Source: Cyanophora paradoxa CCMP329 (Eukaryota > Plantae > Glaucophyta). From it: DNA of 64,000 bases. Within the stretch, counting starts at the first letter, position 1; each line of letters opens with the position of its first letter. Position numbers and translations under genes: made by a program. A model generated the notes under the pieces. That model was not told the DNA's origin and made no database searches. It saw only the letters and a list, made by a program, of their open reading frames with translations. The stretch is taken from NCBI GenBank assembly GCA_004431415.1, contig QPMI01000005.1, positions 1-64,000 on the forward strand, read 5' to 3'. Positions 743 to 60,975 of this stretch are shown here, in pieces.

Positions 743-1054
743 TCGCGGCAGGTGCGAAGCCGACGGGTTTCTGGCATCGCTCGCCTGTCGTTCGCTCATT
801 GCTTGCTTGTACCGGCGCGCAGATCCACAGGGCAGCGGGCGAGCGGCCAGCAGATCTAGACAGCACGCGACCGGCGAGGATTTCTGACCGGGCGGGCTCC
901 GTCGGTTCCGAAAGCTCGGCTCTGTTGCGTCAAGGCGATCCGTCGAAGGTGCGCTCCTCCGGGCGGGCGCAGAACCCCGGTTGCTCGCTAGTTGCCGCTG
1001 GGCGGACCCCGCCGGTCTAGAATCTACGAATCGCTTCGAATTCGCTCTGGGCCG
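743..1054 (+). repeat. 5' region shared by the two LRR-TIR paralogues (copy A)
   Basis: Closely matches 9690-10002 (tcgcggcaggtgcgaagccgacggg...cgctctgggccgc). Contains splice-like GT/AG sites, so probably 5'UTR exons and introns. Confidence 0.9.
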
Positions 1055-1472
1055 CACGGTCCACCTAGCAGCGTGCGAGGGGTCGCACTGATCCCACCAA
1101 GCGACGCGGCGGGCGCGCGGACGTTGGCTAAGATGCGGGGCGAGTTGTCGGTGCCGGGCCTGTGGGGGGGGCCCCACGCTCCGGCGTCGCTTGCTGCCTC
1201 GTTCGCCAACCCACGAACGGGGGGAGGGGGGGAGGACCCAGCGCGCGCCCGGGCGTGGGGGTGCAATCTCCCATAGGCCGCCATCGCTCCCCCGAGCCGC
1301 GACTCGGGCGGGGCGGGGCGGCCGGTAAAGGCAGAGCCCGGCGCGCGCGTGCACCGCCCCTGCGGGAGGGGCTCAGCGCGGGCCGGGCGGCCCCCCGCAG
1401 GCTGGGGACCCGCCGGGCGGGGCGGGGGCGCGCTCCCCGCGGCGCGCTTCTGCCGCTGACCGCCCCGCAGGC

Positions 1473-3114
1473 ATGGGCAAGGGGTGGATCCCGGCGGAGG
1501 GGAAGCTGGCCCTGGAGGAGGAGGGGCGGACGGAGTGGCCGGCGGCGGAGATCGCGCGAGCGGGGCCGGCGAACATCCGCGAGCTCGACCTCGGCTATAA
1601 CAAGCTCACGCGCATCCCGGGGGCCGAGCTCGCGAAGCTGACGAACCTGGAGAAGCTGTGGTTGAGCAACAACCGGCTGACGGCGCTACCGCCGGAGATC
1701 GGCCGCCTCACCGCCCTGCGGTGGCTGAACGTGCAGGGCAACCAGCTGACGGCGCTGCCGCCGGAGATCGGCCGCCTCGCCGCCCTGGAGACGCTGGGCG
1801 TGGGTGACAACAAGCTGACGGCGCTGCCGCCCGAGATCGGCCGCCTCGCCGCCCTGAGGTGGCTGGACGTGGGCTTCAACCAGCTGACGATGCTGCCGCC
1901 GGAGATCGGCCGCCTCGCCGCCCTGGAGACGCTGTACGTGAGCGGCAACCCCCTCACGGCCATGCCGGAGCTCCTCAAGAAGAAGAACACGGCTGAACGC
2001 CTCGCATACCTCCGCTCCCTCCCCGCCCCCGCCCCCGCGGTGCGCCCCGCCGCCCCGGCACCCGGCCCCGCCCCTCGCCACCGCGCACTCACCCCGGCCC
2101 CGGCCTCGGCTTCCACCGCGCACTCACCCGCCACCGCAGCCCGCCGCCCCCTCTGCCCCCGGTCCGTGTACCCCGGTGTACCCCCGCCCGTGCTTCCCTT
2201 CCCCCGACGCGAGCCCGCCCCGCAGCGGCGCCCTCTCCGCCGGCCGCCCAGCGCCCCCAGCAGGCGCCTGCTGCAGTCCCGCAGCACCCGCCCCCGCTGC
2301 AGCCGGCCGCCGACGGCAAGGCCTGGGACTGCTTCGTCAGGCGAGTTGCCCGGCCCTCGCCGCTCACCGCAGGCCCTAACGCCGCCGTGCAGCTACGCCC
2401 ACGTCGACGCGGCGCTCGTCTTCCGCTACTGCGACGCCCTCGAGGCCGCCGGCTTCAAAATATGGTTCGCCCCCCTCCAAGGCCTCCCCTCTCCGTGGCC
2501 CCCTCCCCCGCCCCCGCTCCGCTGACGCCCTCGCCCCTCGCAGGGTCGACCGCGAGCTCAAGGCGGGCCAGAGGTGGATGGCCAAGATCGGGGTGCGCGT
2601 CGCCCACCGCTTCGCGCCTTCCAGCGTGCCGAGCGCGCGGGGCGCGGCGCGGGCGCAGGAGGCGATGCAGCGCTGCCGGACGTATGTCTGCTTCCTGTCA
2701 CCGGGGTACATCCGATCCAACAACTGCGACGACGAGGCGCGCCGCGGCCCCCGATTCACGTTCGGGCCGACGATGTTCCTGACCCTCCCGCAGATGCAGT
2801 TCGCCCACCACCAGCTGCGCATCCCCAAGTTCCCCGGTGCGTGCCGCGGCGCGCCCGCCCCGGGCCCTGCGCCCCGCCCCGCCTCACCCTCGGGCGGCAG
2901 TGTGGCTCGTCGACCCCAGGACGGTCGAGCTGCCGGTGGACTACAGGGCGCGCTGCTACCCGCACCCTGCGCTTTCCTGAAATCAGCTTATGCACGTCCC
3001 CAGATGATGCTGGCGTCGGTGAACTGGACGATGCAGCGCGGGGAGGGGGCAGCGGCGGCGGACGCGGCGGCCGGCGACCTGATCGCCGGCCTGCGCGACT
3101 TCCTGCGGCGCTAG
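1473..3114 (+). CDS. LRR-TIR protein (copy A, intact): N-terminal 23-aa LRR array, Pro/Ala linker, C-terminal TIR_2-type domain
   Basis: First coding exon has LxxLxVxxNxLTALPPEIGRL repeats. Splicing at GT/GC-AG sites gives WDCFVSYAHVDAALVFRYCDALEAAGFKIW|VDRELKAGQRWMAKIG|EAMQRCRTYVCFLSPGYIRSNNCDDE|MQFAHHQ...FLRR*. This carries TIR box1 (FxSY) and the alphaC C-x-x-E Glu. Confidence 0.88.
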
Positions 3115-3313
3115 CCGCGCTAGCGGGCCAAGTTGGAGAAAAGCCAGTTGGAGCGTCTGGTTGGTTGGTCTGTTTATATATTGATTCAGTGGGGTAACTT
3201 TCCAATCCAGCTTCGAGTTATGGTAGGCCCCTGATATATATATACATATCTGTCTTAATGTAGCTGATAAATAATACGCCAATACGGCTTAATGTAGCCT
3301 ATACAGGGGAGGG

Positions 3314-3314
<1 letters not shown>

Positions 3315-3407
<93 letters not shown>
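3315..3407. repeat. poly-G tract (~93 nt, one T)
   Basis: Read directly. It abuts the apparent 5' end of the MORN gene. Confidence 0.95.
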
Positions 3408-3408
<1 letters not shown>

Positions 3409-6400
3409 AGGAGGCCACCACCACCGCCGCCACCGGTGCGCCCGCGGAGCCGCGAATGCTCGTCGCGCACATCCTCTGACGATTGGGGACCGCCGCGCAG
3501 CCGCCGGAGGAGCCCGCGCCGCCTCCGCCGCCGCCTGTCGAACTTCCCGTGCTCCCCGAGGTCGATGGAATCCGCGGGGCGGTCGAGGCACGCTGCTCTA
3601 CCACGACGGCGCGAAGTACGAGGGGTGAGCCCGAGCCGCTGCGCCGCGCTCCTCGTGCTCCCGCTTCCCGCGCCGCCGCACCGCCGCCGCACCGCCGAGC
3701 GACCGCCGCGTCCGCTTCCGCGCCCGCGGACCACAGGAACTGGACGAAGGACGTGCGGCACCGGTACGGCACGTACCAGTGGGAGAACGGCGACCTGTAC
3801 GAGGGAGAGTGGGTCGACGATCGGCGCGAGGCGAGCGAGCGAGCGAGCGCGCCGCTCGCTCCGAGGCTCCGCCTCTCCGCCCCTGCTGACCTCCGAGGCT
3901 GCAGGGCTCGGGCCAGATCACGTACAGCGGCGGGGACCGCTTCAAGGGCGCCTTCGTGAACAACCTGAAGCACGGGCCCGGCGAGTACTCCTACGTCAAC
4001 GGCGACCGCTTCGTCGGCGTCTGGGTCAACGACGCGCGGCAGGGCAAAGGTGCGGGGGTGGCGAGCGGGAGGGCGGGATTGCGGGCGCCAGCCGCCCGGG
4101 ACGGTTAGAGTTGATAAAAGGGCACCCAGTGCGAGCAAAGCCTAGACACGCGTGCCGGGCACAGCCTAGACACGCGTGCCGGGCACAGCCTAGTCTTAAG
4201 TCTACGCCACACCTAAGCCTCTTAGGCTATCTCTCCGAGGGCGCCTTCTAAGAGCCTGCTCCTTCTAAGAGCCTTCATCCAGCCTTTAGCGCCCGTTTCC
4301 TGAGCCCAGGCCCCGCAGGCACCTTCTGGTACGCGAACGGGGACCGGTACGAGGGGTACTTCCTCGGGGAGCACAGGAACGGCATCGGTTAGGCTCAGAT
4401 CTCACCTGATCTGATCTGATCTGATCTGATCCGATCGGATCTGATGTTATCTTCGCTCAGGTATGATGCTGTACGCGACCGGGGAGCGGTACCAGGGGCG
4501 CTGGGTAGAGGGGCGCCGCGAGGGCAAGGGCTTCCAGCACCTTCCGAACGGTACCCCCGCCCGTTCTTCCCCCCGTTCATTCCTCCGGCGAGGCTTGTGA
4601 CGGGCGGGGCGGGGGGGTAGGGGATACGTTCGAGGGCGACTTCCGAAACGATTTGAGGCACGGGAGTGGCACGTGCCGCTTCCAGGGCGGAGACGTGCGT
4701 ACCCCTCCTTAACTCCTTCCCCTCCTTGGAGGGGCTTATGAATTGTTTCCCGGGGGGTACAGGTCTACGAGGGGCCGTGGGTAGACGGCCAGATGACCGG
4801 TCCCTCGGGTCTCATGAAGTTCTCCAACGGCGACGTCTACCAGGTACCCGTACCCCACTTCGTCTTCCACCCCCCCCCCCCCGAACCGTCCTGGGGTGCA
4901 GGGCCCGTGGAGGGAGGGCGCGATGGACGGGGCGGGGGGTACGATGACGTACTGGGACGGCCGCGTGTACACGGGCGACTGGCGCCGCAACGTGCGGCAC
5001 GGTGCGAGCCCGTACCCCTCGACTCTTCCACCCCCATTTCTAAAAATAGCGCAGGGCGGGGCGTTATGCTGTACACGAACGGGGACAAGTACGAGGGGGA
5101 GTGGAACCAGGGCGTCCGGCAGGGTCAGGTGGGCCCTCTGCTCCGATCTGATCTGATCTGATCTGATCTGATCTGATCTGATCTGATTTGATCGGATCTG
5201 ATTCGATCTGATCTGATTTTATCTAATATGGCGCGGCGGCGCAGGGCGCGCTCACCGTCGCCGAGTCGGGTAGCCGCTTCTCGGGCGAGTGGCTCGAGGA
5301 CGGCCTCCCCTTCGGTGACCTACCCACCATCCCCACCTTCTAAGCCTCTCAGCTAAGCTTCTAAGCTTCGCAGGGGTGGAGGAGCACCCGAGCGGGGACG
5401 TGTACGAGGGCCCCTTCACGGGCGCCCACGGCCACTCCATCGCCCGCCACGGCCACGGCACCCTCCGGTCCGCGCCGCTTTCTTGGGTCTTGGCCGCCTC
5501 CCCCTCTAGCTTCTTAGGTTTCTGAGCTTCTAATGAAAGGAAGGACTTAGGGCTTCTAAGTACAAGCCGCCTCGCGGCCCACTCGAAGCCGACTAGACTC
5601 GAAGCCCGAAGCTAGCTACTCAGGGCTGATCCGATCCCATCCCATCCAATCCGATCCGATCCTCTCCACTCTCGCGCAGGTTCGGGCCTGCCCTGGGCCC
5701 GGACGGGGAGGTCCTGTACGTCGGCCCCTTCGTCATGGGCGACCGCGACGTGCGCCCCGGCCCCGCCCCCGCCCCGGATTGCCCCCGCTAGATTGAACTC
5801 TAAAAGCTTAACGGACCTAAATGCGAGGCACCGCCCCGCCCGCCCATCCGCCCGGCGCGGCGCGGCGCGGTGCGGCGCGGCGCGGGGCCGCGTTGACCAC
5901 GAAGCGCCCGAGCCTGACTCACGGGGCGGGGCGGGGCGCAGGGCCCCGGGGGCCACGCCGAGTACCGCAACGGCGTCGTCTACGACGGCGGTGCGCCCGG
6001 CCCGGCACGGCGCGGCGCGCATTTCTGCGCCTCGAGAACGGGCCGGGGTCGCCGCCGCTTCTAGAACGGAAGCTCGCCTAGGCGCCTGGCGCCGCGCTGG
6101 CGCGGCCAATACATGGGGCGGGGCTCGCGTCCCTTCGAGCGTCTTCTTAAGAATCTAATAGTTTAATTCCTGGGCGGCTCAAGAGTCTGAAAAGAGCTCG
6201 AAAGCGTTTATTGTCTTCTGAGAGTCGCATGGACGCTGATCGCAAGGGGCCGTCGCTCAGATTTCAAGTCCGGCGCCCGCACCGGCCGCGGCGCGGCGCG
6301 GTACCCCAGGAAGCCCCCGCGCGCCCCCCCGGCCCCCGCCCCGGCCCCAGCAGCGGTCCCGGCTGCTTCCTCTGCGCAGCCTTTTGTCCCCCCCGGCGCC

Positions 6401-7565: not shown

Positions 7566-9689
7566 GCGGGGCGGGCCGGGGCTGTGTCCGCGAAGTGTTC
7601 TTGGAAGTGTGCTTTCTTGGAAGGAAGGAAGCTCAAGGGCCGACCTGGGCTATCCGGGCATGCAGCTAATCATGATCATGAAACAGTCAACGATATCTAG
7701 AATAATCGCTGAGGATCGCCAGCCTCAGAGCTGCAGCTGCAGCTGATCATCATGGCCCAGTGTGGCATCGGATCGTGCCCGTGATCATGACTCGAGCTCG
7801 GCGATCGTGATCAGCCGCTGTGCAGCTGACCGCTGCCAGGCTGATCATCACCGAGTCCGACGGTCATGGGATGCATGACCGTGTGACTCTCAGTGATGGA
7901 TCGGATCACAGCCTGCAGCTGGCAGCCAGCTGCAGGCTGAGTCATGAGCCTCCCGGCGCAGCCTGCCTGGCAGAGCAATTGCAGTGCAGCTGTGGCAGAG
8001 AGCTTCGCAGGTTCACCTCTCGGATCTCGAGGCTGCATGCGCTGTCACGGATCCGGAGTAAGAACACAACTAAAGTAATTACAAGACGCGATCAAAATAT
8101 ATAGACTTCAAACACAACTAGAACTTCGGAATACGGGCAAAAACATAATACGGTGTACAGAATTAAGAGCAAGGGGGTCACGTCGCCTCCGAGGCTCCGA
8201 GGCGGCGTGGAGGGGGGCGGGGAGCGGGCACGGGGGGGTTCCGTGGGAGGATCTGGATCCGCTACATTCAGTCGAGGCGCCGACTCGGAGACGAGGCAGC
8301 TTGGGGGGGAAATCCCGAAAGGCTGCGTGGGACTGCAGCTGGGGAGGTCGGGAGCTAAACGGGCGAGCCTCGAGGGGGGCTAAAAGCGAAGAGGGCCGGG
8401 CGGAAGTGAGCGAAGAGAGGTGGAGCGTAGATCGAGAGGCGGGCCGGGGCGGGGACAGCGAGAGGGACAGGAAAAGGCAGGGGGGGAGGGAGGGGCGGCC
8501 GGGGGAGAGCCGGGGCGGGGACGGCTCAGACGGCTCAGACGGCTCAGATGGCCCCGAGACAGCGGCCCGGGGGCGGCCCGGGGGCGGCGGGGGGGAGAGC
8601 GGGCAGCGAGGCCTGCGGGAGGCGCGGGGGGCCGGCGCCACAAGCCTGCGATCTGCGGGGCGAGGGCGTGGGGGCGAGGCGAGGGCGTGGGGGCGAGGCG
8701 AGGGCGTGGGGGGGGGGGGGGGGGGGGGGGGGGGCGAGGGGGGTAAGCGGGGGTTTGGGGACGAAGGGGTACGGTGTGGCGAGGTGGGCCCTGGTCCCGA
8801 GAAGAAGAGGGGCCGGCGGGAGGGGTACGGGGCGGGCGCCCTCTCTCCTCCGGGCGCGGAGTCTCGGAGGGAGAGGGGGAGGGGCCGGGTCCGGCGGCGT
8901 GCCCGGGGTGCTCGCGCTTCGCGCCTCGGCGTCCTAAGTTAGATGGCCGCCACTCCGCCCTGCCCCGGCCCGGAGTCCGCCTCGCGCTACGCTTCCCTAG
9001 CGACCGCCACTCTCCCTAGCCATAGGGGCGCCGGCGCCGCCCTCACAATCGGCGCTGCGGCGGAGGCGCCCCGCCGTTTCCCGCCGCGCCGCAGCCCGCG
9101 CAGCTGCAGCTGCAGCTGCAGGCCATCGGAGCGCTACGCGATACCGGGTACCGCGGCGCGGCCGCTATATATATAGCTAGCGCTGGCAATCGGACGGCCG
9201 GCGCTCTGCTTCGGCATGGCGTCCGCGAAGCCGGCGTCAATAGTTCAATAGCTAGCGCCAATAGGACGGCCGACGCGAGTGCTCCGGCGCTGTGCTCCGA
9301 TCGATATCCGCCGCTGTGCTCCGATATCGATCCGCCATAGCCTAGCTATAGGCCTCCGCTAGCGCTGCGGCTGCCGGGTCCGAGTCGACGTCGACGTCTC
9401 GCCCGCGTCCCGGTCGCCGAAGCCGGAGACCAGAGCTTCGCTGCTGATTCGGCTGCGTGCTGCTGCCAGTCTGCAGTGGGAAGTACTGAAGTGAAAAGGC
9501 ATGCGCAGCGCTGACAGGTCCGCTCACCACAGCCATATGCATGGAAGCAGCAGTGCCCGAGGTGCGTCCGCACCCCGTACCCCGGCGCTTCGGGCGGCCG
9601 GCCGCGGACGGCGTCGGACGGCCTCGGACGGCGTGTACGTACCGACGCCGCAGAGGGCCTCGGTGTTACGGCGGTGTAGGCGGTGTTTG

Positions 9690-10002
9690 TCGCGGCAGGT
9701 GCGAAGCCGACGGGTTTCTTGCATCGCTCCTGTCGACGTCGTTCGCTCATTGCTTGCTTGTACCGGCGCGCAGCTCCACAGGGCAGCGGGCGAGCGTCCA
9801 GCAGATCTAGACAGCACGCGACCGGCGAGGATTTCTGACCGGGCGGGCTCCGTCGGGCCCGAAAGCTCGGCTCTTCTGCGGGAAGTCGATCCGTCGAAAG
9901 TGCGCTCCTCCGGGCGGGCGCATGGCCTGGATTGCTTGCTAGTTGCCGCTGGGGGGATCCCGGTCTAGAACCAACGAATTCGAATCGCTCGCTCTGGGCC
10001 GC
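9690..10002 (+). repeat. 5' region shared by the two LRR-TIR paralogues (copy B)
   Basis: Matches 743-1054. Copy A has about 400 extra bp before the ATG. Confidence 0.9.
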
Positions 10003-10016
10003 GCGCCCCCGCAGGC

Positions 10017-10847
10017 ATGGGCAAGGAGTGGATCCCGGCGGAGGGGAAGCTGGACCTGGGGGGGAAGGATCGGGAGGAGTGGCCGGCGGCGGAGATCGCG
10101 GCGGCGGGGCCCGAGAACATCCGCTGGCTCGAGCTTTGGGGAAACGAGCTCACGAGCATCCCGGGGGCCGAGCTCGCCAAGCTGACGAACCTGGAGTGGC
10201 TGTGGTTGAGCAACAACCGGCTGACGGCGCTGCCGCCGGAGATCGGCCGCCTCACCGCCCTGCGGTGGCTGAACGTGCAGGGCAACCAGCTGGCGGCGCT
10301 GCCGCCGGAGATCGGCCGCCTCGCCGCCCTGCAGACGCTGTACGTGGGTGACAACAGGCTGACGGCGCTGCCGCCGGAGATCGGCCGCCTCGCCGCCCTG
10401 CAGACGCTGTACGTGGGTGACAACCAGCTGACGGCGCTGCCGCCGGAGATCGGCCGCCTCGCCGCCCTGGAGACGCTGGGCGTGGGTGGCAACCAGCTGA
10501 CGGCGCTGCCGCCGGAGATCGGCCGTCTCGCCGCCCTGCAGGGGCTGGACGTGGAGAAAAATCAGCTGACGGCGCTGCCGACGGAGATCGGCCGCCTCGC
10601 CGCCCTGCGGTGGCTGAACGTGCAGAGCAACCAGCTGACGGCGCTGCCGCCGGAGATCGGCCGCCTCGCCGCCCTGCAGGAGCTGTACGTGTGGAACAAC
10701 CAGCTGACGGCGCTGCCGCCGGAGATCGGCCGCCTTTCCAACCTGCAGAAGCTGAGCGTGGAGAAAAATCAGCTAGCGGCGCTGCCGCCGGAGATCGGCC
10801 GCCTCTCCCGTCTGCAGACGCTGGACGTGAGCGGCAACCCCCTCTGA
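10017..10847 (+). CDS. LRR array of LRR-TIR copy B (276 aa, stops right after the last LRR)
   Basis: Uninterrupted ORF with nine LP(P/T)EIGRL-type 23-aa repeats and an N-terminus paralogous to 1473. TGA at 10845-10847. Confidence 0.85.
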   Translation: MGKEWIPAEGKLDLGGKDREEWPAAEIAAAGPENIRWLELWGNELTSIPGAELAKLTNLEWLWLSNNRLTALPPEIGRLTALRWLNVQGNQLAALPPEIGRLAALQTLYVGDNRLTALPPEIGRLAALQTLYVGDNQLTALPPEIGRLAALETLGVGGNQLTALPPEIGRLAALQGLDVEKNQLTALPTEIGRLAALRWLNVQSNQLTALPPEIGRLAALQELYVWNNQLTALPPEIGRLSNLQKLSVEKNQLAALPPEIGRLSRLQTLDVSGNPL

Positions 10848-11587
10848 ACGCCTGAACGCCTCGGATCCCTCCGCTCCCTCCCCGCCTCCGCCCCCGCCCC
10901 GCGCCCCGCCGCCCCGGCCCCCGGTCCGTGCACCACCCCGGAGCAGCCGGCCCCGCCCTCCCCTCACGCCCCCCCGCAGCGGCCCAGTACGACGTCTCCC
11001 TCTCGCCCTAGCAGACCTCGGCCGGCCACCTCGCCCTCGCCCTCAAGCTCCAGCTCGAGCAGGCCCGCCCCGGCCTCCGCGTCTTCCTCGACGTCGACGA
11101 CTCCCGCCTCGAGCTCCACCAGTGCGCCCCTCTGAGTCGGAGCGCTCGCCGCGCTCTCACCCCAGCCGGCCCCCCGCCCCGCAGGCTCGAGCGGATCATC
11201 GACGCCTCCGCGAGCGTCGTCCTCATCATCTCTCAGGGTCCGTGAGGCTGCCGCCACGTTCCTGCGGCGCCTAATCTTACGGTGCCGTGCAGACGTCCTG
11301 TCGAGCCACTACGTGCTGGGCGAGGTGCGGCACGCGGCGCGGGCGGGGAAGAACATCGTCCTCCTCCACGACGAGAAGTCCCTTCCCCGCTTCCTCGCCC
11401 GTGCGCCCCCGCCCCAGAACCACCCCGCCAGCCAACCGAATTTGATCGCCCCTCAGCGGGGGAGATCCCGTCCGACCTGCGGCTCGTGTTCGCGCGCGTG
11501 GCGATCCCGTGCTACGCCGAGGCGGCCTTCCGGCGGGTCAGCGTCCGGCTCCTGCTCGAGGCCTGCGACGAGGCCGCCCGCCGCTGA
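10848..11587 (+). pseudogene. disabled SARM1-like TIR domain of LRR-TIR copy B
   Basis: In frame beyond the TGA and after splicing: QYDVSLSP*QTSAGHLALALKLQLEQARPGLRVFLDVDD...VVLIISQ|DVLSSHYVLGEVRHAARAGKNIVLLHDEK...AARR*. A second stop (TAG) lies at 11009-11011. Confidence 0.78.
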
Positions 11588-12239
11588 GTGCCCCGCCCGC
11601 CCGCCCCCCGGCCCCGTGCACCTCTTCGCAACCTTCTCATCGACCGCCGCCGCCGGCGTCAGTCTAGAGTCTTCGCCAAAGTCTTTCTCGCGAGTTCCCA
11701 AAGTCTCTTTTCTCCATTAATATTCGTCTTACGAAATTGCCCGCCCCCCTGCCCGGCTCCGGCCCGCCTCCCTCCCCGGCCCTTCCCTCCCCCCTCCTCC
11801 CTCCTCGAGGAGGCCGCGGGTGCTCTCGGGGCTCCCGAGGTTCAGCCCTCCTCCGCGAGGCCCCGCGCTCCGCATCCGCCAAAGTCTTAGATTTCCCTTC
11901 GAATTCGGTTGAATTGTTCAGGCGGCTGGACGTAATTTGTCTTTCCAAATTGTGATTCTTGTCTAGCGGTTCTGTCCTAGCTGCCTAAGAGTCTGTCTTT
12001 GATCATGAGTCTGTCTGTACGATGTTTTTCGGCGAGATCGACTGCCGCAGTGCGAGGGTAGCTCGGGCTCGCGATCGGGGCTCGGGTTAACGTTTGGCCG
12101 CCGGGCAGGCTCAGTGGGATGCCGGAATATATAAGACACAACGCTAACTAGAATAAGGACAAAACCATAGTGCACAGAAGAGCGAGAAATCGCGCTAGAG
12201 TCACGTCGCCCCCGGGGATCACTCGTGTACTAGAGAGAG

Positions 12240-19070: not shown

Positions 19071-21195
19071 ATGGAGCCCCCCGAGACTCCCGCGGACGGC
19101 AGAGCCGCCGTGCAACAGCCGATGGACATCGCTGGCCGGCCGAGCGACGACGGCCCGCGCGAGCCGCTCGGGCGCTGTTCCCTTTGCGCCGCGGAGCTGT
19201 ATGCGCGGGACCTCGTCGTCGAGTGTGGTTCGTACGCCCGGATGCCCGCACAGCTCGCACTCACTCCTGCCCAGCCGAGTGCCTGGACGTGCGGCTGTGC
19301 TTCCAATGCTTCCTGGCGAGCAAGGAGGGCGCGGGACACAAGGCGGTGCACATGTACACACGCATCGAGAACGCGAACTTCCCGCTCCTCTCGGACGACT
19401 GGTGCGCATGCGTCGGGCACTCGGGGCTGCTCGACGCTCACCTTGCGCAGGGGCGCCGACGAGGAACTGGCACTTCTAGAGGCGCTTGAGCGGCACGGCA
19501 TCGGGCCCTGGCAGACTGTCGCCGAGGAGGTGCGCTAACAGGGCGTTCGAATTCAGACGCGGAGGTCCGGCAGCTAAGACCGCCGAATCAGGTCGGCACG
19601 AAGACGTGGTGGGAATGCGAACGGCACTACGCGCAAACATACCTTCAGGGCATGAGCGCCCCTCTTCCTGTGCATAATTTTCCAGCATCTCATCTTTGCT
19701 CGGGTTCTAAGAACCGTGCAGGATTTCGAGAAAGCTTTCGGTGGAATCGGGACGCCCGTGAAACCGCGTGAGCAGCAGGCCGAGCGGCCAGCACCTCTTG
19801 CCGAGCAAAGGTGGGATCGTCCAAGAGGCCAGCAAGGATCGAAACGCCCGTCAAAAAAGCCCCGCTCACATCTGGCAGTGAGTTTCTGCTTGCGCCATCT
19901 TTGACGTGTTCTCAGTGCTGCTGTGCAGCAAGGGGAGGAGGATGGATGCTACCATCCAGACGTTCGAGGATACATGCCGAAACGTGGAGACTTCGATACA
20001 GAATGGGCCAACGATGCTGAGGTTGTTATTCAGGTCAGCTTTTTCGGACAATAAAGCCCAGGATCATTTTGACCTTCTTGCCAGGATATTGCATTCGACC
20101 CCTCGGACGGCCCCAGGGACCGAGGTGCAGACACATTCTTTCTTGGCTATGCTCTTGTCCAAACATTTTCTGCAGCGCTCAAGCTGGAGGTGCTGCATGC
20201 ATACAATGCAAAATTGACGGAGCGGGAGTTCAGGAAGACGTTCCTGATCGAAAGAGGGCTGCTGGACTTGAAGAAACAGCATGCAGCAGAGAGACGGAGA
20301 GGCAAGGATGATCGCGATACATTGGTGCGAATGAAGCCATTTGCCAGGTTTCACGCAGCAAAAGAGCACGAGGCATTATTCCACGGTCTTGTAGGTTTGT
20401 GTTATTCCCAATTCGTTTTGGGCTGGCATTGCCCTGACACATCTCAGAGGAGCGCAAGCTCAGAGGAGAGATAGCAAGGCTGCAGCGGTATCGGAGGCTG
20501 GGCATTCGATCACTTGCTGAGACACACGCCTACGAGAATGATCGCCGGAAGAGGGTGAGCTCTAACATGTGGACTTTGCCTAATGTCTGATCCTGTTTTG
20601 TAGGAGATTGAGGCAGATGAAAAGAAGGCGAAGTGCTTCATGAAGCTTGGCTCCAGTTCAGTCACTCAATCTTCTGGAACGACCAGTGCCAGGCGCTCGA
20701 CCAAGGTGTGTGTCAAACTTTCGTGGCAGCAGATTCTTGCTCACACTTCGTGCAGGGAGAGCCCCTGCTTATGCTTGGTGCGGATGCCGATAACAACAAA
20801 CGAAGGAAGAAGAAGGGAAAGGGACCCAGTCTGCCCCCCCTAGCTCTCCACGGACTTCCGGGCGAGGATCAGCTGGAGCCTGAGGAGTTGGCCTTGTGCT
20901 CTCAACTCCACATGCTTCCAGAGCAGGCGTGTTGACGTATTCCAGATCTCGCGCATGCAGTCCTCCTCGTCTCTGACCCAGATGCACACAGTACCTGCTC
21001 GCGAAGGACGCGCTCATCTGTGCAGACACTCCAACTGGAAAGTGCTCAGCAGCGGATGCTGTTAAGATCCTTGCACGCCGACTGGGTGCTTTGCTTGCGG
21101 ACTATCATTCTTGTTGCGTCTGACCCTTTCTTCTAGATGCTGGGCGGGCAACAAGCATCCACAACTTGCTCATCTCGAAGGGGTGGATCGAGTAG
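19071..21195 (+). CDS. ADA2: transcriptional adaptor ADA2 (ZZ zinc finger, SANT, SWIRM)
   Basis: CSLC...[15 protein letters not shown]...H...Y; DW|[26 protein letters not shown]|VGTKT..CERHY; [13 protein letters not shown]; C-terminal [18 protein letters not shown]|YL...KGWIE*. Confidence 0.92.
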
Positions 21196-21400: not shown

Positions 21401-21625
<225 letters not shown>

Positions 21626-45568: not shown

Positions 45569-46804
45569 TCAGTCCTCGTCGACGTCTTCGCATGGGGCCG
45601 CGGGGGCTACGCGGAGCGGCGGGGGCAGGGCGAGGCCCATAGTGAAGAACAACGTGCCAAAATGTGCACCGGCTCGCCCCGAGAAGGCCAAATTCGTGGC
45701 CTTCTGGAGCAGAATTCGCTTGTGGAGCATGGCGTAGACGCAGGTGCTGGCGACAGCGCCCGCCGCGTTCACGTAGCGCCTGTCCAAAGCCCCACAAATA
45801 AGCTAGAGTTTGATATCTAAGCGTTCTTCAACGAGCGGGGTCTGCCACGCACCACAAAGTCGGGTCCTACAAGAACCGCGAATTCCAGAATTGACGCAGG
45901 CGAAGATAAGCGGAAAAAAGAACTCTTTCGGGCTGCCGGTCGTTAACGGCGTCAGGCATGACAAGACTCGAGAGATCTACATTCGTGGAGAAAGAAAGTG
46001 CTCGCCAGGGCCGCCCTTGCCAGGGATGCGTTGAGCGCTTCCTGCGGGAGGGCCGCGGGCCGTCAAGAGGCGCGAAAGATGCCCGATTCGCGGACCTTGG
46101 CCTCCCTCTCCCTCATCTGCACGCGGAAAGCGTCATGATCAGCGCGAGCGCCTGGAAGGCGCGGACCTTGGCCTCGTTCTCACTCACCTGAACGCGGAAA
46201 GCGTTATGCGCAGCGCGAGCCTCGGAGCGGCAGCGCATGCGTGTGACGCAGCGCGCACCTTGGCTTCCTCCTCCCTATCCTTGAGCGTTGAAAGCTTCAT
46301 GATCAGCGCGAGCGCGGGCGATGCGCCTGGAAGGCGCGGACCTTGGCCTCCCTCTCCCTCACCTGAACGCGAAAAGCGTCATGATCAGCGCGAGCGCGGG
46401 CGATGCACCTGGAAGGCGCGGACCTTGGCCTCCCTCTCCCTCACCTGAACGCGGAAAGCGTCATGCTCAGCGCGAGTGCGAGCGAAGCGCCGGCGCGGAC
46501 CTTGGCTTCCCTCTCCCTCATCTGCACGCGGAAAGCATCATGCTTCAGCACGAGCGCGAGCGATGCGCTTGCGGGCGCGGACCTTGGCCTCCTTCTCGCT
46601 CGCCTAAACGCGGAAGGCCTCATGATCAGCATAAAACCAGTAAACGAGAAGACGGCGAACCTGCAGGGCCTCAATCTCGGCCTAAAGTCGACGCAAAGGA
46701 GCGTCGTCAACCGCCAATTTACTGAAGGCCGCGCTCATGGCGAACTTCACCTTGAGATGCTCAATCAAAGCCTGTCGATTGCCGACATCATCAGGGCCCG
46801 ACAT
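45569..46804 (-). pseudogene. degenerate gene with tandem coiled-coil-like repeats
   Basis: MSGPDDVGNRQALIEHLK...RRL*AEIEALQ...DHEAFRV*ASEKEAKVRA, then about seven repeats of (D/E)HDAFRVQVREREAKVRA broken by frameshifts. In-frame TAGs at 46682 and 46604 fall where Gln is expected. Confidence 0.6.
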
Positions 46805-52222: not shown

Positions 52223-52359
52223 TCACACTTCGTGCAGGGAGAGCCCCTGCTTATGCTTGGTGCGGATGCCGATAACAACAAACGAAGGAAGAAGAAGGGA
52301 AAGGGACCCAGTCTGCCCTCCCTAGCTCTCCACGGACTTCCGGGCGAGGATCAGCTGGA
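52223..52359 (+). repeat. 137-bp near-identical copy of an internal ADA2 segment (20741-20877)
   Basis: Direct comparison shows one substitution. The copy includes the intron 3' end (TCACACTTCGTGCAG) and part of the exon. Confidence 0.97.
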
Positions 52360-60195: not shown

Positions 60196-60975
60196 GACCC
60201 CAAGATCGTCTTCAAGATGACTGCCTCCCGTCCTGCTGCTCTCCTCACGGAGATTGCTGCGGCGGGTGGTGGTACGACTTCCGTCGCTCTGCTCTCTGAG
60301 TCGCACCTTTCGGGGGCTCAGAGATTGTGCCGGCGGGACCCCAAGATCTTCTTCAAGATGACTGCCTCCCGTCCTGCTGCTCTCCTCACGGAGATTGCTG
60401 CGGCGGGTGGTGGTACGACTTCCGTCGCTCTGCTCTCTGAGTCGCACCTTTCGGGGGCTCAGAGATTGTGCCGGCGGGACCCCAAGATCTTCTTCAAGAT
60501 GACTGCCTCCCGTCCTGCTGCTCTCCTCACGGAGATTGCTGCGGCGGGTGGTGGTACGACTCTGCTCTCTGAGTCGCACCTTTCGGGGGCTCAGAGATTG
60601 TGCCGGCGGGACCCCAAGATCTTTTTCAAGATGACTGCCTCCCGTCCTGCTGCTCTCCTCACGGAGATTGCTGCGGCGGGTGGTGGTACGACTTCCGTCG
60701 CTCTGCTCTCTGAGTCGCACCTTTCGGGGGCTCAGAGATTGTGCCGGCGGGACCCCAAAATCTTCTTCAAGATGACTGCCTCCCGTCCTGCTGCTCTCCT
60801 CACGGAGATTGCTGCGGCGGGTGGTGGTACGACTTCCGTCGCTCTGCTCTCTGAGTCGCACCTCTCTGGGGCTCAGAGATTGTGCCGGCGGGATCCGAAG
60901 ATCGTCTTGCGCCTCCTGTCGCTCTGCTCTTGTCTCCCCGTTTGTGGGGGTGAGAGATTGTGCCGGCGGGATAAG
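60196..60975. repeat. tandem array of 141-bp hairpin-rich units (5 full copies plus a degenerate sixth)
   Basis: Units start at 60196, 60337, 60478, 60610, 60751 and 60892. The third unit lacks 9 bp. Confidence 0.97.

What the first reader, a model, noticed from the sequence alone, without database searches (positions are those of the whole stretch)
10186..10847. LRR modules with an invariant DNA scaffold and a hypervariable, combinatorial concave face
Seen: each 69-bp unit has a nearly invariant ~45-nt scaffold (cagctgacggcgctgccgccggagatcggccgcctcgccgccctg), conserved even at synonymous sites. The exposed xxLxVxx positions vary: RWLNVQG, QTLYVGD, ETLGVGG, QGLDVEK, RWLNVQS, QELYVWN, QKLSVEK, QTLDVSG. 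Copy A adds ETLGVGD, RWLDVGF and ETLYVSG. The same sub-blocks (RW/ET/QT; N/G/D/Y; GD/EK/SG) recur in new combinations, and there are 4 versus 9 LP(P/T)EIGRL units. Known: agnathan VLRs and brown-algal ROCO LRRs diversify the same surface by module shuffling. Inference: recombination or gene conversion through the scaffold generates a repertoire of binding specificities.
Basis: partly seen in the sequence, partly recalled or inferred. Interest (0 to 1): 0.82.

Follow-up and report, generated by a model that had tools for sequence, protein, structure and literature searches.

The report
Fast-evolving repeat face, algal LRR gene
Two neighbouring receptor-like genes of the alga Cyanophora paradoxa carry leucine-rich repeats that are almost identical DNA copies except at the five exposed residues of each repeat. 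This is the classic mark of a binding surface under pressure to change, and it arose by inherited copy gain or loss plus point changes, with no sign of programmed shuffling.

Summary
Window 10191-10844 holds nine full 69-bp LRR units and one partial unit. The paralogue at 1647-1955 holds four full units and one partial. Variation sits in codons 2, 3, 5, 7 and 8 of the 23-codon unit, which lie in or beside the beta-strand of a confident model.

The scaffold's synonymous identity is real. Codon choice is position-specific, and non-repeat exons of the same genes use CTG/CTC and GCG/GCC about evenly. But the scaffold is not specially conserved. Conserved codons interleaved with the variable ones are just as uniform (pS 0.071 versus 0.078). 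So whole units are young copies, and only the exposed codons have changed fast (dN 0.94 versus dS 0.08; ratio about 2 to 12, depending on correction). A bacterial array with the same protein layout gives a ratio near 1.

Across 16 family genes, related units keep their order (125 of 141 matches), and arrays differ by in-register unit gain or loss. There are no introns between units, no cassette bank and no reordering. Somatic change could not be tested.

Gene B has stop codons before and inside its TIR part.

Verdict: plant-R-gene-style diversifying evolution in an undescribed glaucophyte LRR-TIR family. First readers noted the same idea on other DNA of this genome.

The parts
9900..10014 (+). 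5' UTR intron of gene B (GT..AG), ending 2 nt before the ATG
   Evidence: Joint 9899>10015 in contigs of the RNA-like runs X15 and X17
10017..10847 (+). Gene B LRR exon: a 276-codon ORF with Pfam LRR_8/LRR_4/LRR_14, ending at TGA 10845-10847
   Evidence: AlphaFold2 model with pLDDT 94.1 and pTM 0.90, with regular strand/helix repeats
10017..10190 (+). N-terminal cap (residues 1-34) and a first, irregular 24-residue LRR (unit 0, 10119-10190)
   Evidence: The N-terminus is identical to that of paralogue P0002
10191..10811 (+). Nine full 69-bp / 23-codon units, B1-B9
10812..10844 (+). Terminal partial unit B10 (LQTLDVSGNPL)
10980..11587 (+). TIR-type exons downstream of gene B: about 10980-11121 (with in-frame TAG at 11009-11011), 11185-11236, 11292-11381 and about 11480-11587
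   Evidence: tblastn of P0001. Frames checked. GT..AG joints 11121>11185 and 11236>11292 in X15. P0001 carries Pfam TIR_2
1473..3114 (+). Gene A: an apparently intact LRR - proline-rich linker - TIR gene, collinear with paralogue P0030
   Evidence: Intron positions are inferred from homology only
1647..1955 (+). Gene A array: four full 69-bp units A1-A4 (1647-1922) and terminal partial unit A5
743..1058 (+). Non-coding 5' flank of gene A, 87.6% identical to 9690-10005 upstream of gene B; used as a neutral yardstick for the A/B duplication

Best explanation
The stretch is the sensor exon of one member (gene B) of a Cyanophora paradoxa family of soluble LRR-TIR proteins. A second member (gene A) lies 8.5 kb upstream. 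The exon is a head-to-tail array of 23-residue LRRs of the SHOC2/LRRD1 type. The units are young copies of one another, made and lost by in-register tandem duplication and deletion (unequal crossing-over or replication slippage through the 69-bp repeat, within and between paralogues). That is why all codons except the exposed ones are nearly identical, including at synonymous sites. After copying, the five solvent-exposed residues in and beside each beta-strand (x in LxxLxVxxN) accumulated amino-acid replacements several times faster than silent change. This is diversifying selection on a ligand-binding concave surface, as in plant resistance-gene LRRs. The process is germline and evolutionary. 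Shown here: the anatomy, identity by descent of units, the nonsynonymous excess, collinear arrays with unit indels, and the strand location of the variable residues in a model. Inferred: selection by ligands (pathogen-derived or other), unequal crossing-over as the mechanism, and an immune-type role. Gene B itself stops before its TIR part and has a second stop in the first TIR exon. It is therefore either an LRR-only product or a decaying copy.
For: Variation is confined to codons 2, 3, 5, 7 and 8. Between units, face dN is 0.94, against dS 0.08 in the other 18 codons. Over disjoint pairs the median pN/pS is 5.8. On minimum change counts, face nonsynonymous changes run at 1.60 per site and synonymous changes at 0.46 per site (binomial p = 0.001). 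Units B4 and B7 differ at 0 of 54 nt outside the x codons but at 9 of 15 nt inside them; B4/A2 give 0 and 8, and B5/B7 give 1 and 10. Synonymous diversity is the same in the conserved codons inside the variable block (0.071) as in the scaffold (0.078), so whole units share recent ancestry. Codon choice is position-specific (permutation p < 1e-4 for Leu, Ala and Arg). Non-repeat exons of the same genes use CTG 39% / CTC 61% and GCG/GCC about evenly, so codon bias does not explain the uniformity. In the homologous A versus B comparison (codons 1-104), face dN is 0.277, other LRR codons give dN 0.026, and dS is 0.063. Negative control: a bacterial array with the same protein layout (L001) has face dN 0.57 and dS 0.58. 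In the family (16 genes, 77 units), entropy is 1.9-3.2 bits at face positions and 0.6 bits or less at core scaffold positions, there are 61 distinct faces, and genes carry 3-9 units. Related units stay in order (125 of 141 matches), and P0002 equals gene B minus units 3-7. Strands fall on unit positions 3-7 in a pLDDT 94 model. The closest solved relatives are LRRD1, Leptospira LIC proteins and SHOC2. Paralogues carry Pfam TIR_2.
Against: Only 13 full units are available as DNA, pairwise comparisons are not independent, and repeat units are not strict orthologues. With GC3 = 0.97 the Nei-Gojobori method may overcount silent sites. If silent sites are cut to one third, the median ratio falls to about 1.9 and the minimum to 0.8. 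Against the non-coding A/B divergence (about 0.135) the A/B face dN (0.277) rests on only about 9 changes. Gene B has two premature stops, so part of its variation could be recent neutral decay. No ligand, phenotype or population data exist. The unit order of the array could not be checked against reads, because the contigs break in every scaffold.
Confidence: 0.7

Rival explanations
1. The faces are old and the scaffold is converted. The variable faces are ancient and kept by selection, while ongoing short-tract (possibly GC-biased) gene conversion among units and paralogues keeps wiping differences from the 42-45-nt scaffold. The contrast would then reflect homogenisation, not fast change of the face.
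For: Scaffold distance between units is the same within an array and between arrays A and B (3.5 versus 3.4 nt), as exchange between paralogues would give. Gene conversion is common in clustered LRR genes (PMC3113787). The scaffold amino acids T12, A13, P16, E17 and R20 are more uniform across the family than LRR structure requires.
Against: The conserved codons 1, 4, 6 and 9 are interleaved at 3-6 nt with the variable codons and are just as uniform at silent sites (pS 0.071 versus 0.078). A conversion tract cannot skip the x codons in between. Third positions of x codons 2 and 3 are invariant G in all 13 units while first and second positions vary. Whole-unit turnover plus fast change at x codons explains both facts. 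This rival can still contribute as a partial process.
Confidence: 0.15
2. Programmed or somatic diversification. The arrays would be rearranged within a clone or lifetime by targeted recombination or copy-choice through the scaffold, as in agnathan VLR genes or as hypothesised for brown-algal ROCO genes.
For: The invariant 45-nt scaffold would be an ideal substrate for homology-guided copy choice. Unit number differs between close paralogues. Zambounis et al. proposed this for Ectocarpus (PMC3341825).
Against: Both arrays sit in complete germline ORFs with a start codon, cap and terminal unit. All 13 scaffold copies in 64 kb lie inside these two ORFs on the + strand, so there is no cassette bank and there are no reversed or orphan units. 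Unit order is collinear among paralogues. Contigs from runs dated 2019 and 2024 match unit-specific junctions without a mismatch: 10499-10599 in X2, 10496-10607 and 10233-10312 in X15, and 10779-10886 in X1. The only joints inside the array have 21-25-nt sides and most likely come from paralogues.
Confidence: 0.03
3. Neutral decay or mutation bias. Gene B is a pseudogene and the scatter of differences reflects relaxed constraint or a local mutational hotspot, without selection for change.
For: Gene B ends at TGA 10845-10847 before its linker and has TAG 11009-11011 in the first TIR exon.
Against: Relaxed constraint cannot raise dN above dS, nor confine change to five structurally defined codons while the other 18 stay near-identical. 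The apparently intact gene A and the predicted gene models of the other family members show the same pattern. The 276-codon ORF is unbroken. RNA-like runs hold exact pieces of the LRR exon.
Confidence: 0.05
4. Assembly artefact. The number and order of units in the window are wrong because near-identical 69-bp repeats were mis-assembled.
For: The scaffold (45 nt) is longer than the 31-nt words of the contigs, so no contig bridges two variable blocks. Unit order therefore rests on the assembly alone.
Against: Each variable block, together with its unit-specific scaffold variants on both sides, is found without a mismatch in independent runs, for example B5-B6 in X2 and X15. The array has no indels and an open frame. 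The order is collinear with paralogue P0001. The central result (face versus silent sites) does not depend on unit order.
Confidence: 0.05

Closest known systems
LRR domains of plant resistance genes (NLR and Cf-type clusters; e.g. the coffee SH3-CNL cluster, PMC3113787)
   Same: Ka/Ks above 1 is confined to the x residues of xxLxLxx. The genes are clustered paralogues, with gene conversion or unequal crossing-over and birth-and-death evolution. LRR number varies between paralogues. Decayed copies lie beside intact ones.
   Different: There is no NB-ARC domain: the LRR is joined directly to a TIR through a proline-rich linker, and the LRR is N-terminal. The repeats are far more regular (a 23-residue SHOC2 type, with units about 92% identical at silent sites). 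The host is a unicellular glaucophyte. No resistance function is known.
Ectocarpus and other brown-algal ROCO LRR genes (PMC3341825, PMC11378527)
   Same: These are an algal candidate receptor family with very regular LRRs of the same LxxLxLxxNxL type, diversifying selection on the LRRs, variable LRR number between recent duplicates, and recombination invoked as the source of variation.
   Different: In the brown algae each LRR is its own 72-nt exon. Spare or reversed LRR exons lie in the introns, and the order is visibly rearranged. Here the units are contiguous in one exon, all are on one strand inside the ORF, and the order is conserved. The partner domain is TIR, not ROC-COR.
Agnathan variable lymphocyte receptors (established knowledge: incomplete germline gene, flanking LRR cassette banks, deaminase-linked copy choice)
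   Same: Both have LRR modules with a conserved framework and a hypervariable concave face, and short homology in the framework could guide joining.
   Different: Here the germline genes are complete, no cassette bank lies in the 64 kb, and there is no evidence of somatic assembly. The proteins are cytosolic-type, without a signal peptide or stalk.
SHOC2 / LRRD1 / Leptospira LIC-type 23-residue LRR proteins (PDB 7tvf, 9fqr, 4u08)
   Same: The repeat class and consensus (LxxLxLxxNxLxxLPxxIGxLxx) are the same, with sequence E-values of 1e-73 to 1e-109, and the solenoid has the strand on the variable positions.
   Different: Those are single conserved genes or bacterial surface proteins. No unit-level DNA identity or face-specific excess has been shown for them here.
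Highly regular bacterial LRR arrays (P0003 from GCA_016124945.1; P0004 from a JGI metagenome)
   Same: They show the same protein picture: an invariant NQLTxLPPEIGxL scaffold and variable faces, 57-59% identical to gene B.
   Different: Silent sites between their units are diverged (dS 0.43-0.58) and face dN/dS is about 1. Their scaffold is held by protein constraint, whereas in Cyanophora whole units are recent copies.

Membership tests
23-residue SHOC2/LRRD1-type leucine-rich repeat | Repeat consensus LxxLxLxxNxLxxLPxxIGxLxx with significant Pfam LRR matches | tested here: met
   LRR_8 at 3e-42 and LRR_14 at 1.4e-47; unit consensus; PDB sequence hits to LRRD1 at 8.5e-109 and SHOC2 at about 1e-73
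23-residue SHOC2/LRRD1-type leucine-rich repeat | Solenoid with one short beta-strand per unit on the LxLxL segment and a helix on the convex side | tested here: met
   AlphaFold2 pLDDT 94.1. Strands fall at residues 61-65, 84-88, 107-111 and so on (unit positions 3-7), and helices at unit positions 16-20. This is a model only.
R-gene-style LRR under diversifying selection | Nonsynonymous excess restricted to the x residues of xxLxLxx | tested here: met
   Face dN 0.94 versus dS 0.08; median pN/pS 5.8, or 1.9 under the harshest correction; p = 0.001 on minimum change counts; a bacterial control gives about 1. No codon-model test was possible.
R-gene-style LRR under diversifying selection | Paralogues differ in repeat number by in-register recombination, within a clustered multigene family | tested here: met
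   Genes carry 3-9 units. P0002 equals gene B without units 3-7. B3 and B4 have identical faces and differ at 2 nt. The arrays are collinear.
R-gene-style LRR under diversifying selection | Shown role in recognising a pathogen or other ligand | not testable with these tools
   No functional data exist, and no paper was found on Cyanophora LRR-TIR genes.
VLR-type somatically assembled LRR receptor | Incomplete germline gene flanked by banks of partial LRR cassettes | tested here: not met
   Both arrays lie in complete ORFs with ATG, cap and terminal unit. All scaffold matches in the window lie inside them.
VLR-type somatically assembled LRR receptor | Different assembled arrays in different cells of one individual or clone | not testable with these tools
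   Only 31-mer contigs were available, and they cannot bridge the 45-nt scaffold. Unit junctions that could be checked were identical in runs of 2019 and 2024.
Brown-algal ROCO-type LRR exon shuffling | Each LRR encoded by its own exon with phase-compatible introns | tested here: not met
   The ORF is continuous over all units, with period exactly 69 and 0% indels.
Brown-algal ROCO-type LRR exon shuffling | Spare, inactivated or reverse-strand LRR units around the gene, and rearranged order between recent duplicates | tested here: not met
   There is no scaffold match on the minus strand or outside the ORFs. Order is conserved between paralogues.
Brown-algal ROCO-type LRR exon shuffling | ROC-COR GTPase partner domain | tested here: not met
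   Pfam finds LRR plus TIR_2/TIR in the paralogues and no Roc/COR.
Cyanophora LRR-TIR family | Shared N-terminal cap (MG[KRG][GE]WIP...), an LRR array, a linker and a TIR domain | tested here: met
   Gene A is collinear with P0030 through the TIR exons, and P0030 hits TIR_2 at 3.5e-17. Single exons searched by reference were too short to hit Pfam. For gene B the feature is met only in part, because stops at 10845-10847 and 11009-11011 break the frame.

The most novel reading that the evidence does not exclude
The 45-nt invariant scaffold serves as a recombination guide. Cyanophora would then change unit number and content of these arrays at a high rate within clonal cultures or between closely related strains, giving a population-level or even somatic repertoire of LRR-TIR sensors in a unicellular alga.
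Probability: 0.04. Interest if true: 0.9.

Novelty: new member of a known kind. Interest (0 to 1): 0.45.

Why it matters
Glaucophytes are one of the three primary-plastid lineages, and nothing is published on their immune-type receptors (within the library searched). This finding adds an evolutionary signature to the bare domain architecture: replacements concentrated on the predicted binding face, and rapid gain and loss of repeat units. In plants that signature marks receptors engaged in arms races. It points to the concave-face residues as the place to look for ligands. It suggests that the LRR-plus-TIR logic, without an NB-ARC switch, is used for recognition in a unicellular alga. It also gives a simple, amplifiable locus for testing between-strain or within-culture variation. 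The pattern itself is textbook for LRR receptors, so the surprise is moderate.

Tried and rejected
1. DNA of paralogues. The exact-protein look-up of P0002 found nothing, and a metagenome scan for the 27-nt scaffold core found nothing. DNA-level statistics therefore rest on the 13 full units of this window.

2. Reads. All 24 runs are kept as 31-mer contigs. The one read-laying run (2,201 letters) confirmed introns and unit junctions. It cannot show unit order, copy number or rare variants. The other letters and the short joints inside the array (for example 10206>10621, side 25) are best read as paralogue contigs; for example 10395-10396 GC>AA matches the ...RLAN variant of P0043. I do not count them as alleles or rearrangements.

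3. Codon bias as the cause of silent-site identity: rejected.

4. Free combinatorial assortment of sub-blocks: rejected as stated, because face positions 2-3, 2-5, 3-5, 5-7 and 5-8 are significantly associated.

5. Within-array homogenisation stronger than between arrays: not seen.

6. Pfam on single TIR exons by reference gave no hits because they are only 25-37 residues long. Full-length paralogue proteins P0001 and P0030 served as proxies.

7. I did not use complex prediction, the big representative search, fold search or the atlas. The family and the fold were already clear.

Full report
WHAT IS THERE

The window is GC-rich (about 0.50-0.75 across 2-kb windows), intron-bearing eukaryotic DNA. 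The best protein matches are EukProt gene models named tig..., which earlier follow-ups of this scan assign to the glaucophyte Cyanophora paradoxa. I did not verify the species name independently.

Tandem Repeats Finder reports a 69-bp array of 9.0 copies at 10212-10829 (87% matches, no indels). A second array of 4.2 copies lies at 1663-1950. Both lie in ORFs on the + strand. Gene B is 10017-10847 (276 codons). Gene A starts at 1473.

In protein register, gene B has a 34-residue cap, an irregular first LRR (10119-10190), nine full 23-codon units from 10191 and a terminal partial unit. Gene A has four full units from 1647 and a terminal one. Pfam scores both as LRR proteins (LRR_8 at 3e-42 for B). 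The nearest solved relatives by sequence are LRRD1, Leptospira LIC proteins and SHOC2, that is, the 23-residue LxxLxLxxNxLxxLPxxIGxLxx class. An AlphaFold2 model of gene B (single sequence, pLDDT 94.1, pTM 0.90) is a regular solenoid. Its strands fall on unit positions 3-7 and its helices on positions 16-20.

The 45-nt scaffold occurs 11 times with 3 or fewer mismatches, and a 27-nt core occurs 13 times. None is expected by chance, and all copies lie inside the two ORFs on the + strand. Column by column, differences among the 13 full units pile up in codons 2, 3, 5, 7 and 8. A few fall in codons 10, 12, 22 and 23. Codons 1, 4, 15 and 17-19 are identical in all units, third positions included.

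IS THE SILENT-SITE IDENTITY MEANINGFUL?

Yes. Synonymous codon choice is position-specific. Leu is CTG at positions 1, 4, 11 and 14 but CTC at position 21. Ala is GCG at position 13 but GCC at positions 22-23. No shuffle of 20,000 reached the observed sorting for Leu, Ala or Arg.

In the non-repeat exons of the same two genes GC3 is 0.97, but the G/C choice is roughly even: CTG 39% and CTC 61%, GCG 28 to GCC 19, and GTC more frequent than GTG. Codon bias therefore cannot explain 26 of 26 CTG at positions 1 and 4 (about 2e-11). The units are identical by descent.

A bacterial array with the same protein layout (P0003, locus L001) makes the contrast plain. Its scaffold amino acids are invariant, yet silent sites between units have diverged (dS 0.58). 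Its face dN is 0.57, a ratio near 1.

THE SCAFFOLD IS NOT SPECIAL; THE EXPOSED CODONS ARE

Silent diversity in the conserved codons that sit between the variable ones (codons 1, 4, 6 and 9) is 0.071. In the scaffold it is 0.078. Third positions of variable codons 2 and 3 are G in all 13 units while their first and second positions vary. So whole units share recent ancestry, and only the x codons have moved.

- Pooled Nei-Gojobori estimates give face dN 0.94, against dS 0.08 in the remaining 18 codons. Those 18 codons have dN 0.077.
- Over random sets of six disjoint unit pairs, the median pN/pS is 5.8 and the minimum 2.5.
- A minimum-change count gives 20 replacements on 12.5 sites at the face, against 9 silent changes on 19.5 sites (p = 0.001).
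- Units B4 and B7 differ at 0 of 54 nucleotides outside the x codons and at 9 of 15 inside them. B4/A2 give 0 and 8. B5/B7 give 1 and 10.
- For the strictly homologous comparison of genes A and B (codons 1-104), face dN is 0.277, other LRR codons give 0.026, and dS is 0.063. Their non-coding 5' flanks are 87.6% identical.

Caveats. There are only 13 units, the pairs are not independent, and with GC3 = 0.97 the number of effectively free silent sites may be overcounted. If silent sites are cut to one third, the median ratio falls to 1.9. The A/B face estimate rests on about nine changes. I therefore put the excess at roughly 2- to 12-fold. That is real in direction but needs codon models on the whole family.

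SHUFFLING OR ORDERED DESCENT?

I collected 14 further family proteins and parsed 77 units from 16 genes. Entropy is 1.9-3.2 bits at positions 2, 3, 5, 7 and 8. It is 0.6 bits or less at positions 9, 11, 14, 15 and 17-21. There are 61 distinct faces, and genes carry 3 to 9 full units.

Faces that recur do so in the same relative order. Counting unit pairs that share at least 3 of 5 face residues, 125 of the 141 matches possible in any order are collinear. Among the close relatives the figures are gene B/P0002 5 of 5, B/A 4 of 4, B/P0006 5 of 5 and B/P0001 7 of 8.

Paralogue P0002 has the same cap and the same first two and last three units as gene B, but lacks units 3-7. That deletion lies between the two RW-N-Q units, as in-register unequal crossing-over would produce. 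B3 and B4 have identical faces and differ at two scaffold nucleotides, which marks a recent single-unit duplication.

Face positions are not freely assorted. Neighbouring positions are significantly associated (2-3, 2-5, 3-5, 5-7 and 5-8, p <= 0.005), while the most distant ones are not. Related faces mostly differ by one or two nucleotides.

Together this means unit gain and loss through the repeat, plus point replacement at exposed codons. It does not mean reordering of modules or mixing of sub-blocks. Recombination in the scaffold could in any case only move whole variable blocks.

In Ectocarpus ROCO genes each LRR is a separate 72-nt exon. Spare and reverse-strand LRR exons sit in the introns, and recent duplicates are visibly rearranged (PMC3341825; PMC11378527). 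Here the units are contiguous in one exon, none lies outside the ORFs or on the other strand, and order is kept.

VLR genes need an incomplete germline gene and cassette banks (established knowledge). Here the genes are complete and no bank lies in the 64 kb.

The best match is the behaviour of plant resistance-gene LRRs: Ka/Ks above 1 only at the x residues of xxLxLxx, with gene conversion, unequal crossing-over and birth-and-death in clusters (PMC3113787).

READS

All runs found are kept as 31-mer contigs. Laid on 9600-11800 (2,201 letters), the RNA-like runs show GT..AG joints at 9899>10015, 11121>11185 and 11236>11292. They also hold exact pieces of the LRR exon, so the locus or a very close paralogue is probably transcribed.

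Contigs from a 2019 run and a 2024 run match unit-specific junctions without a mismatch: 10499-10599 (which links the B5 and B6 scaffold variants across the B6 face) and 10779-10886. No contig can bridge the 45-nt scaffold. Array order, copy number and any within-culture heterogeneity therefore remain untested.

GENE CONTEXT

Gene A is collinear with paralogue P0030 through a proline-rich linker and all TIR exons. P0030 scores TIR_2 at 3.5e-17.

Gene B ends at TGA 10845-10847. A run of five C at 10838-10842 is read as if it were four in P0002's model. Its first TIR-type exon carries TAG at 11009-11011, where P0001 has Lys. A DNA contig agrees with the window across the first stop. Gene B is thus an LRR-only product or a decaying copy.

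I searched exons singly by reference.

VERDICT

Units are recent copies in their entirety, and the five strand-associated codons have diverged several-fold faster than silent sites. The mechanism best supported is ordinary germline evolution: unit turnover by in-register unequal recombination, plus diversifying selection on the concave face. The setting is an undescribed glaucophyte LRR-TIR family; no paper was found. Programmed or somatic shuffling is neither supported nor fully excluded.

First readers of this scan noted the same idea on other DNA of this genome (s1-611649 and s1-515306). Earlier follow-ups described the family.

Noticed in passing
window 10838-10847 and 11009-11011: Gene B cannot reach its TIR in frame. 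TGA at 10845-10847 follows a 5-C run that paralogue P0002 reads as 4 C. A TAG replaces a Lys codon of P0001 in the first TIR-type exon. A DNA contig of run X1 agrees with the window at the first stop.
   Followed up: partly
window 1473-1490 and 10017-10034; P0001-P0074: All family members begin Met-Gly-(K/R/G)-(G/E)-Trp-Ile-Pro. The invariant Gly2 could be an N-myristoylation site that tethers these soluble-looking receptors to a membrane.
   Followed up: no
L001:501-1862 and L002:501-1691: Bacterial and metagenome LRR proteins 57-59% identical to gene B have the same invariant NQLTxLPPEIGxL scaffold and variable faces, but diverged silent sites. The L002 scaffold DNA is within 2 nt of the Cyanophora 27-nt core, probably through shared GC-rich codon choice. 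A bacterial origin of the family was not examined.
   Followed up: partly
window 1512-1532 versus 10056-10076 (cap residues 13-20): The N-terminal cap also differs sharply between genes A and B (ALEEEGRT versus DLGGKDRE). Cap dN is 0.165 against dS 0.11, so a second fast-evolving patch may lie outside the repeats. The numbers are small.
   Followed up: partly
window 3306-3407: There is a run of 102 G (94% pure) between the two LRR genes. On the minus strand it reads as a long poly-proline ORF.
   Followed up: no
window 3483-3959 and 4793-5161: ORFs between genes A and B carry repeated YEGEW / NGD.Y.G.W motifs that look like MORN repeats (by eye only).
   Followed up: no
window 21403-21622; 20741-20877 and 52223-52359: There is a perfect (AT)110 microsatellite inside a lower-GC island (about 50% GC, against about 70% around it). 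A 137-bp pair of 99% identical repeats lies 31 kb apart, possibly ends or relics of a mobile element.
   Followed up: no
window 60196-60908 and 46089-46630: Two further tandem arrays are present: 141 bp x 5.1 copies (95% matches) and about 82 bp x 4.7 copies. Their nature is unknown.
   Followed up: no
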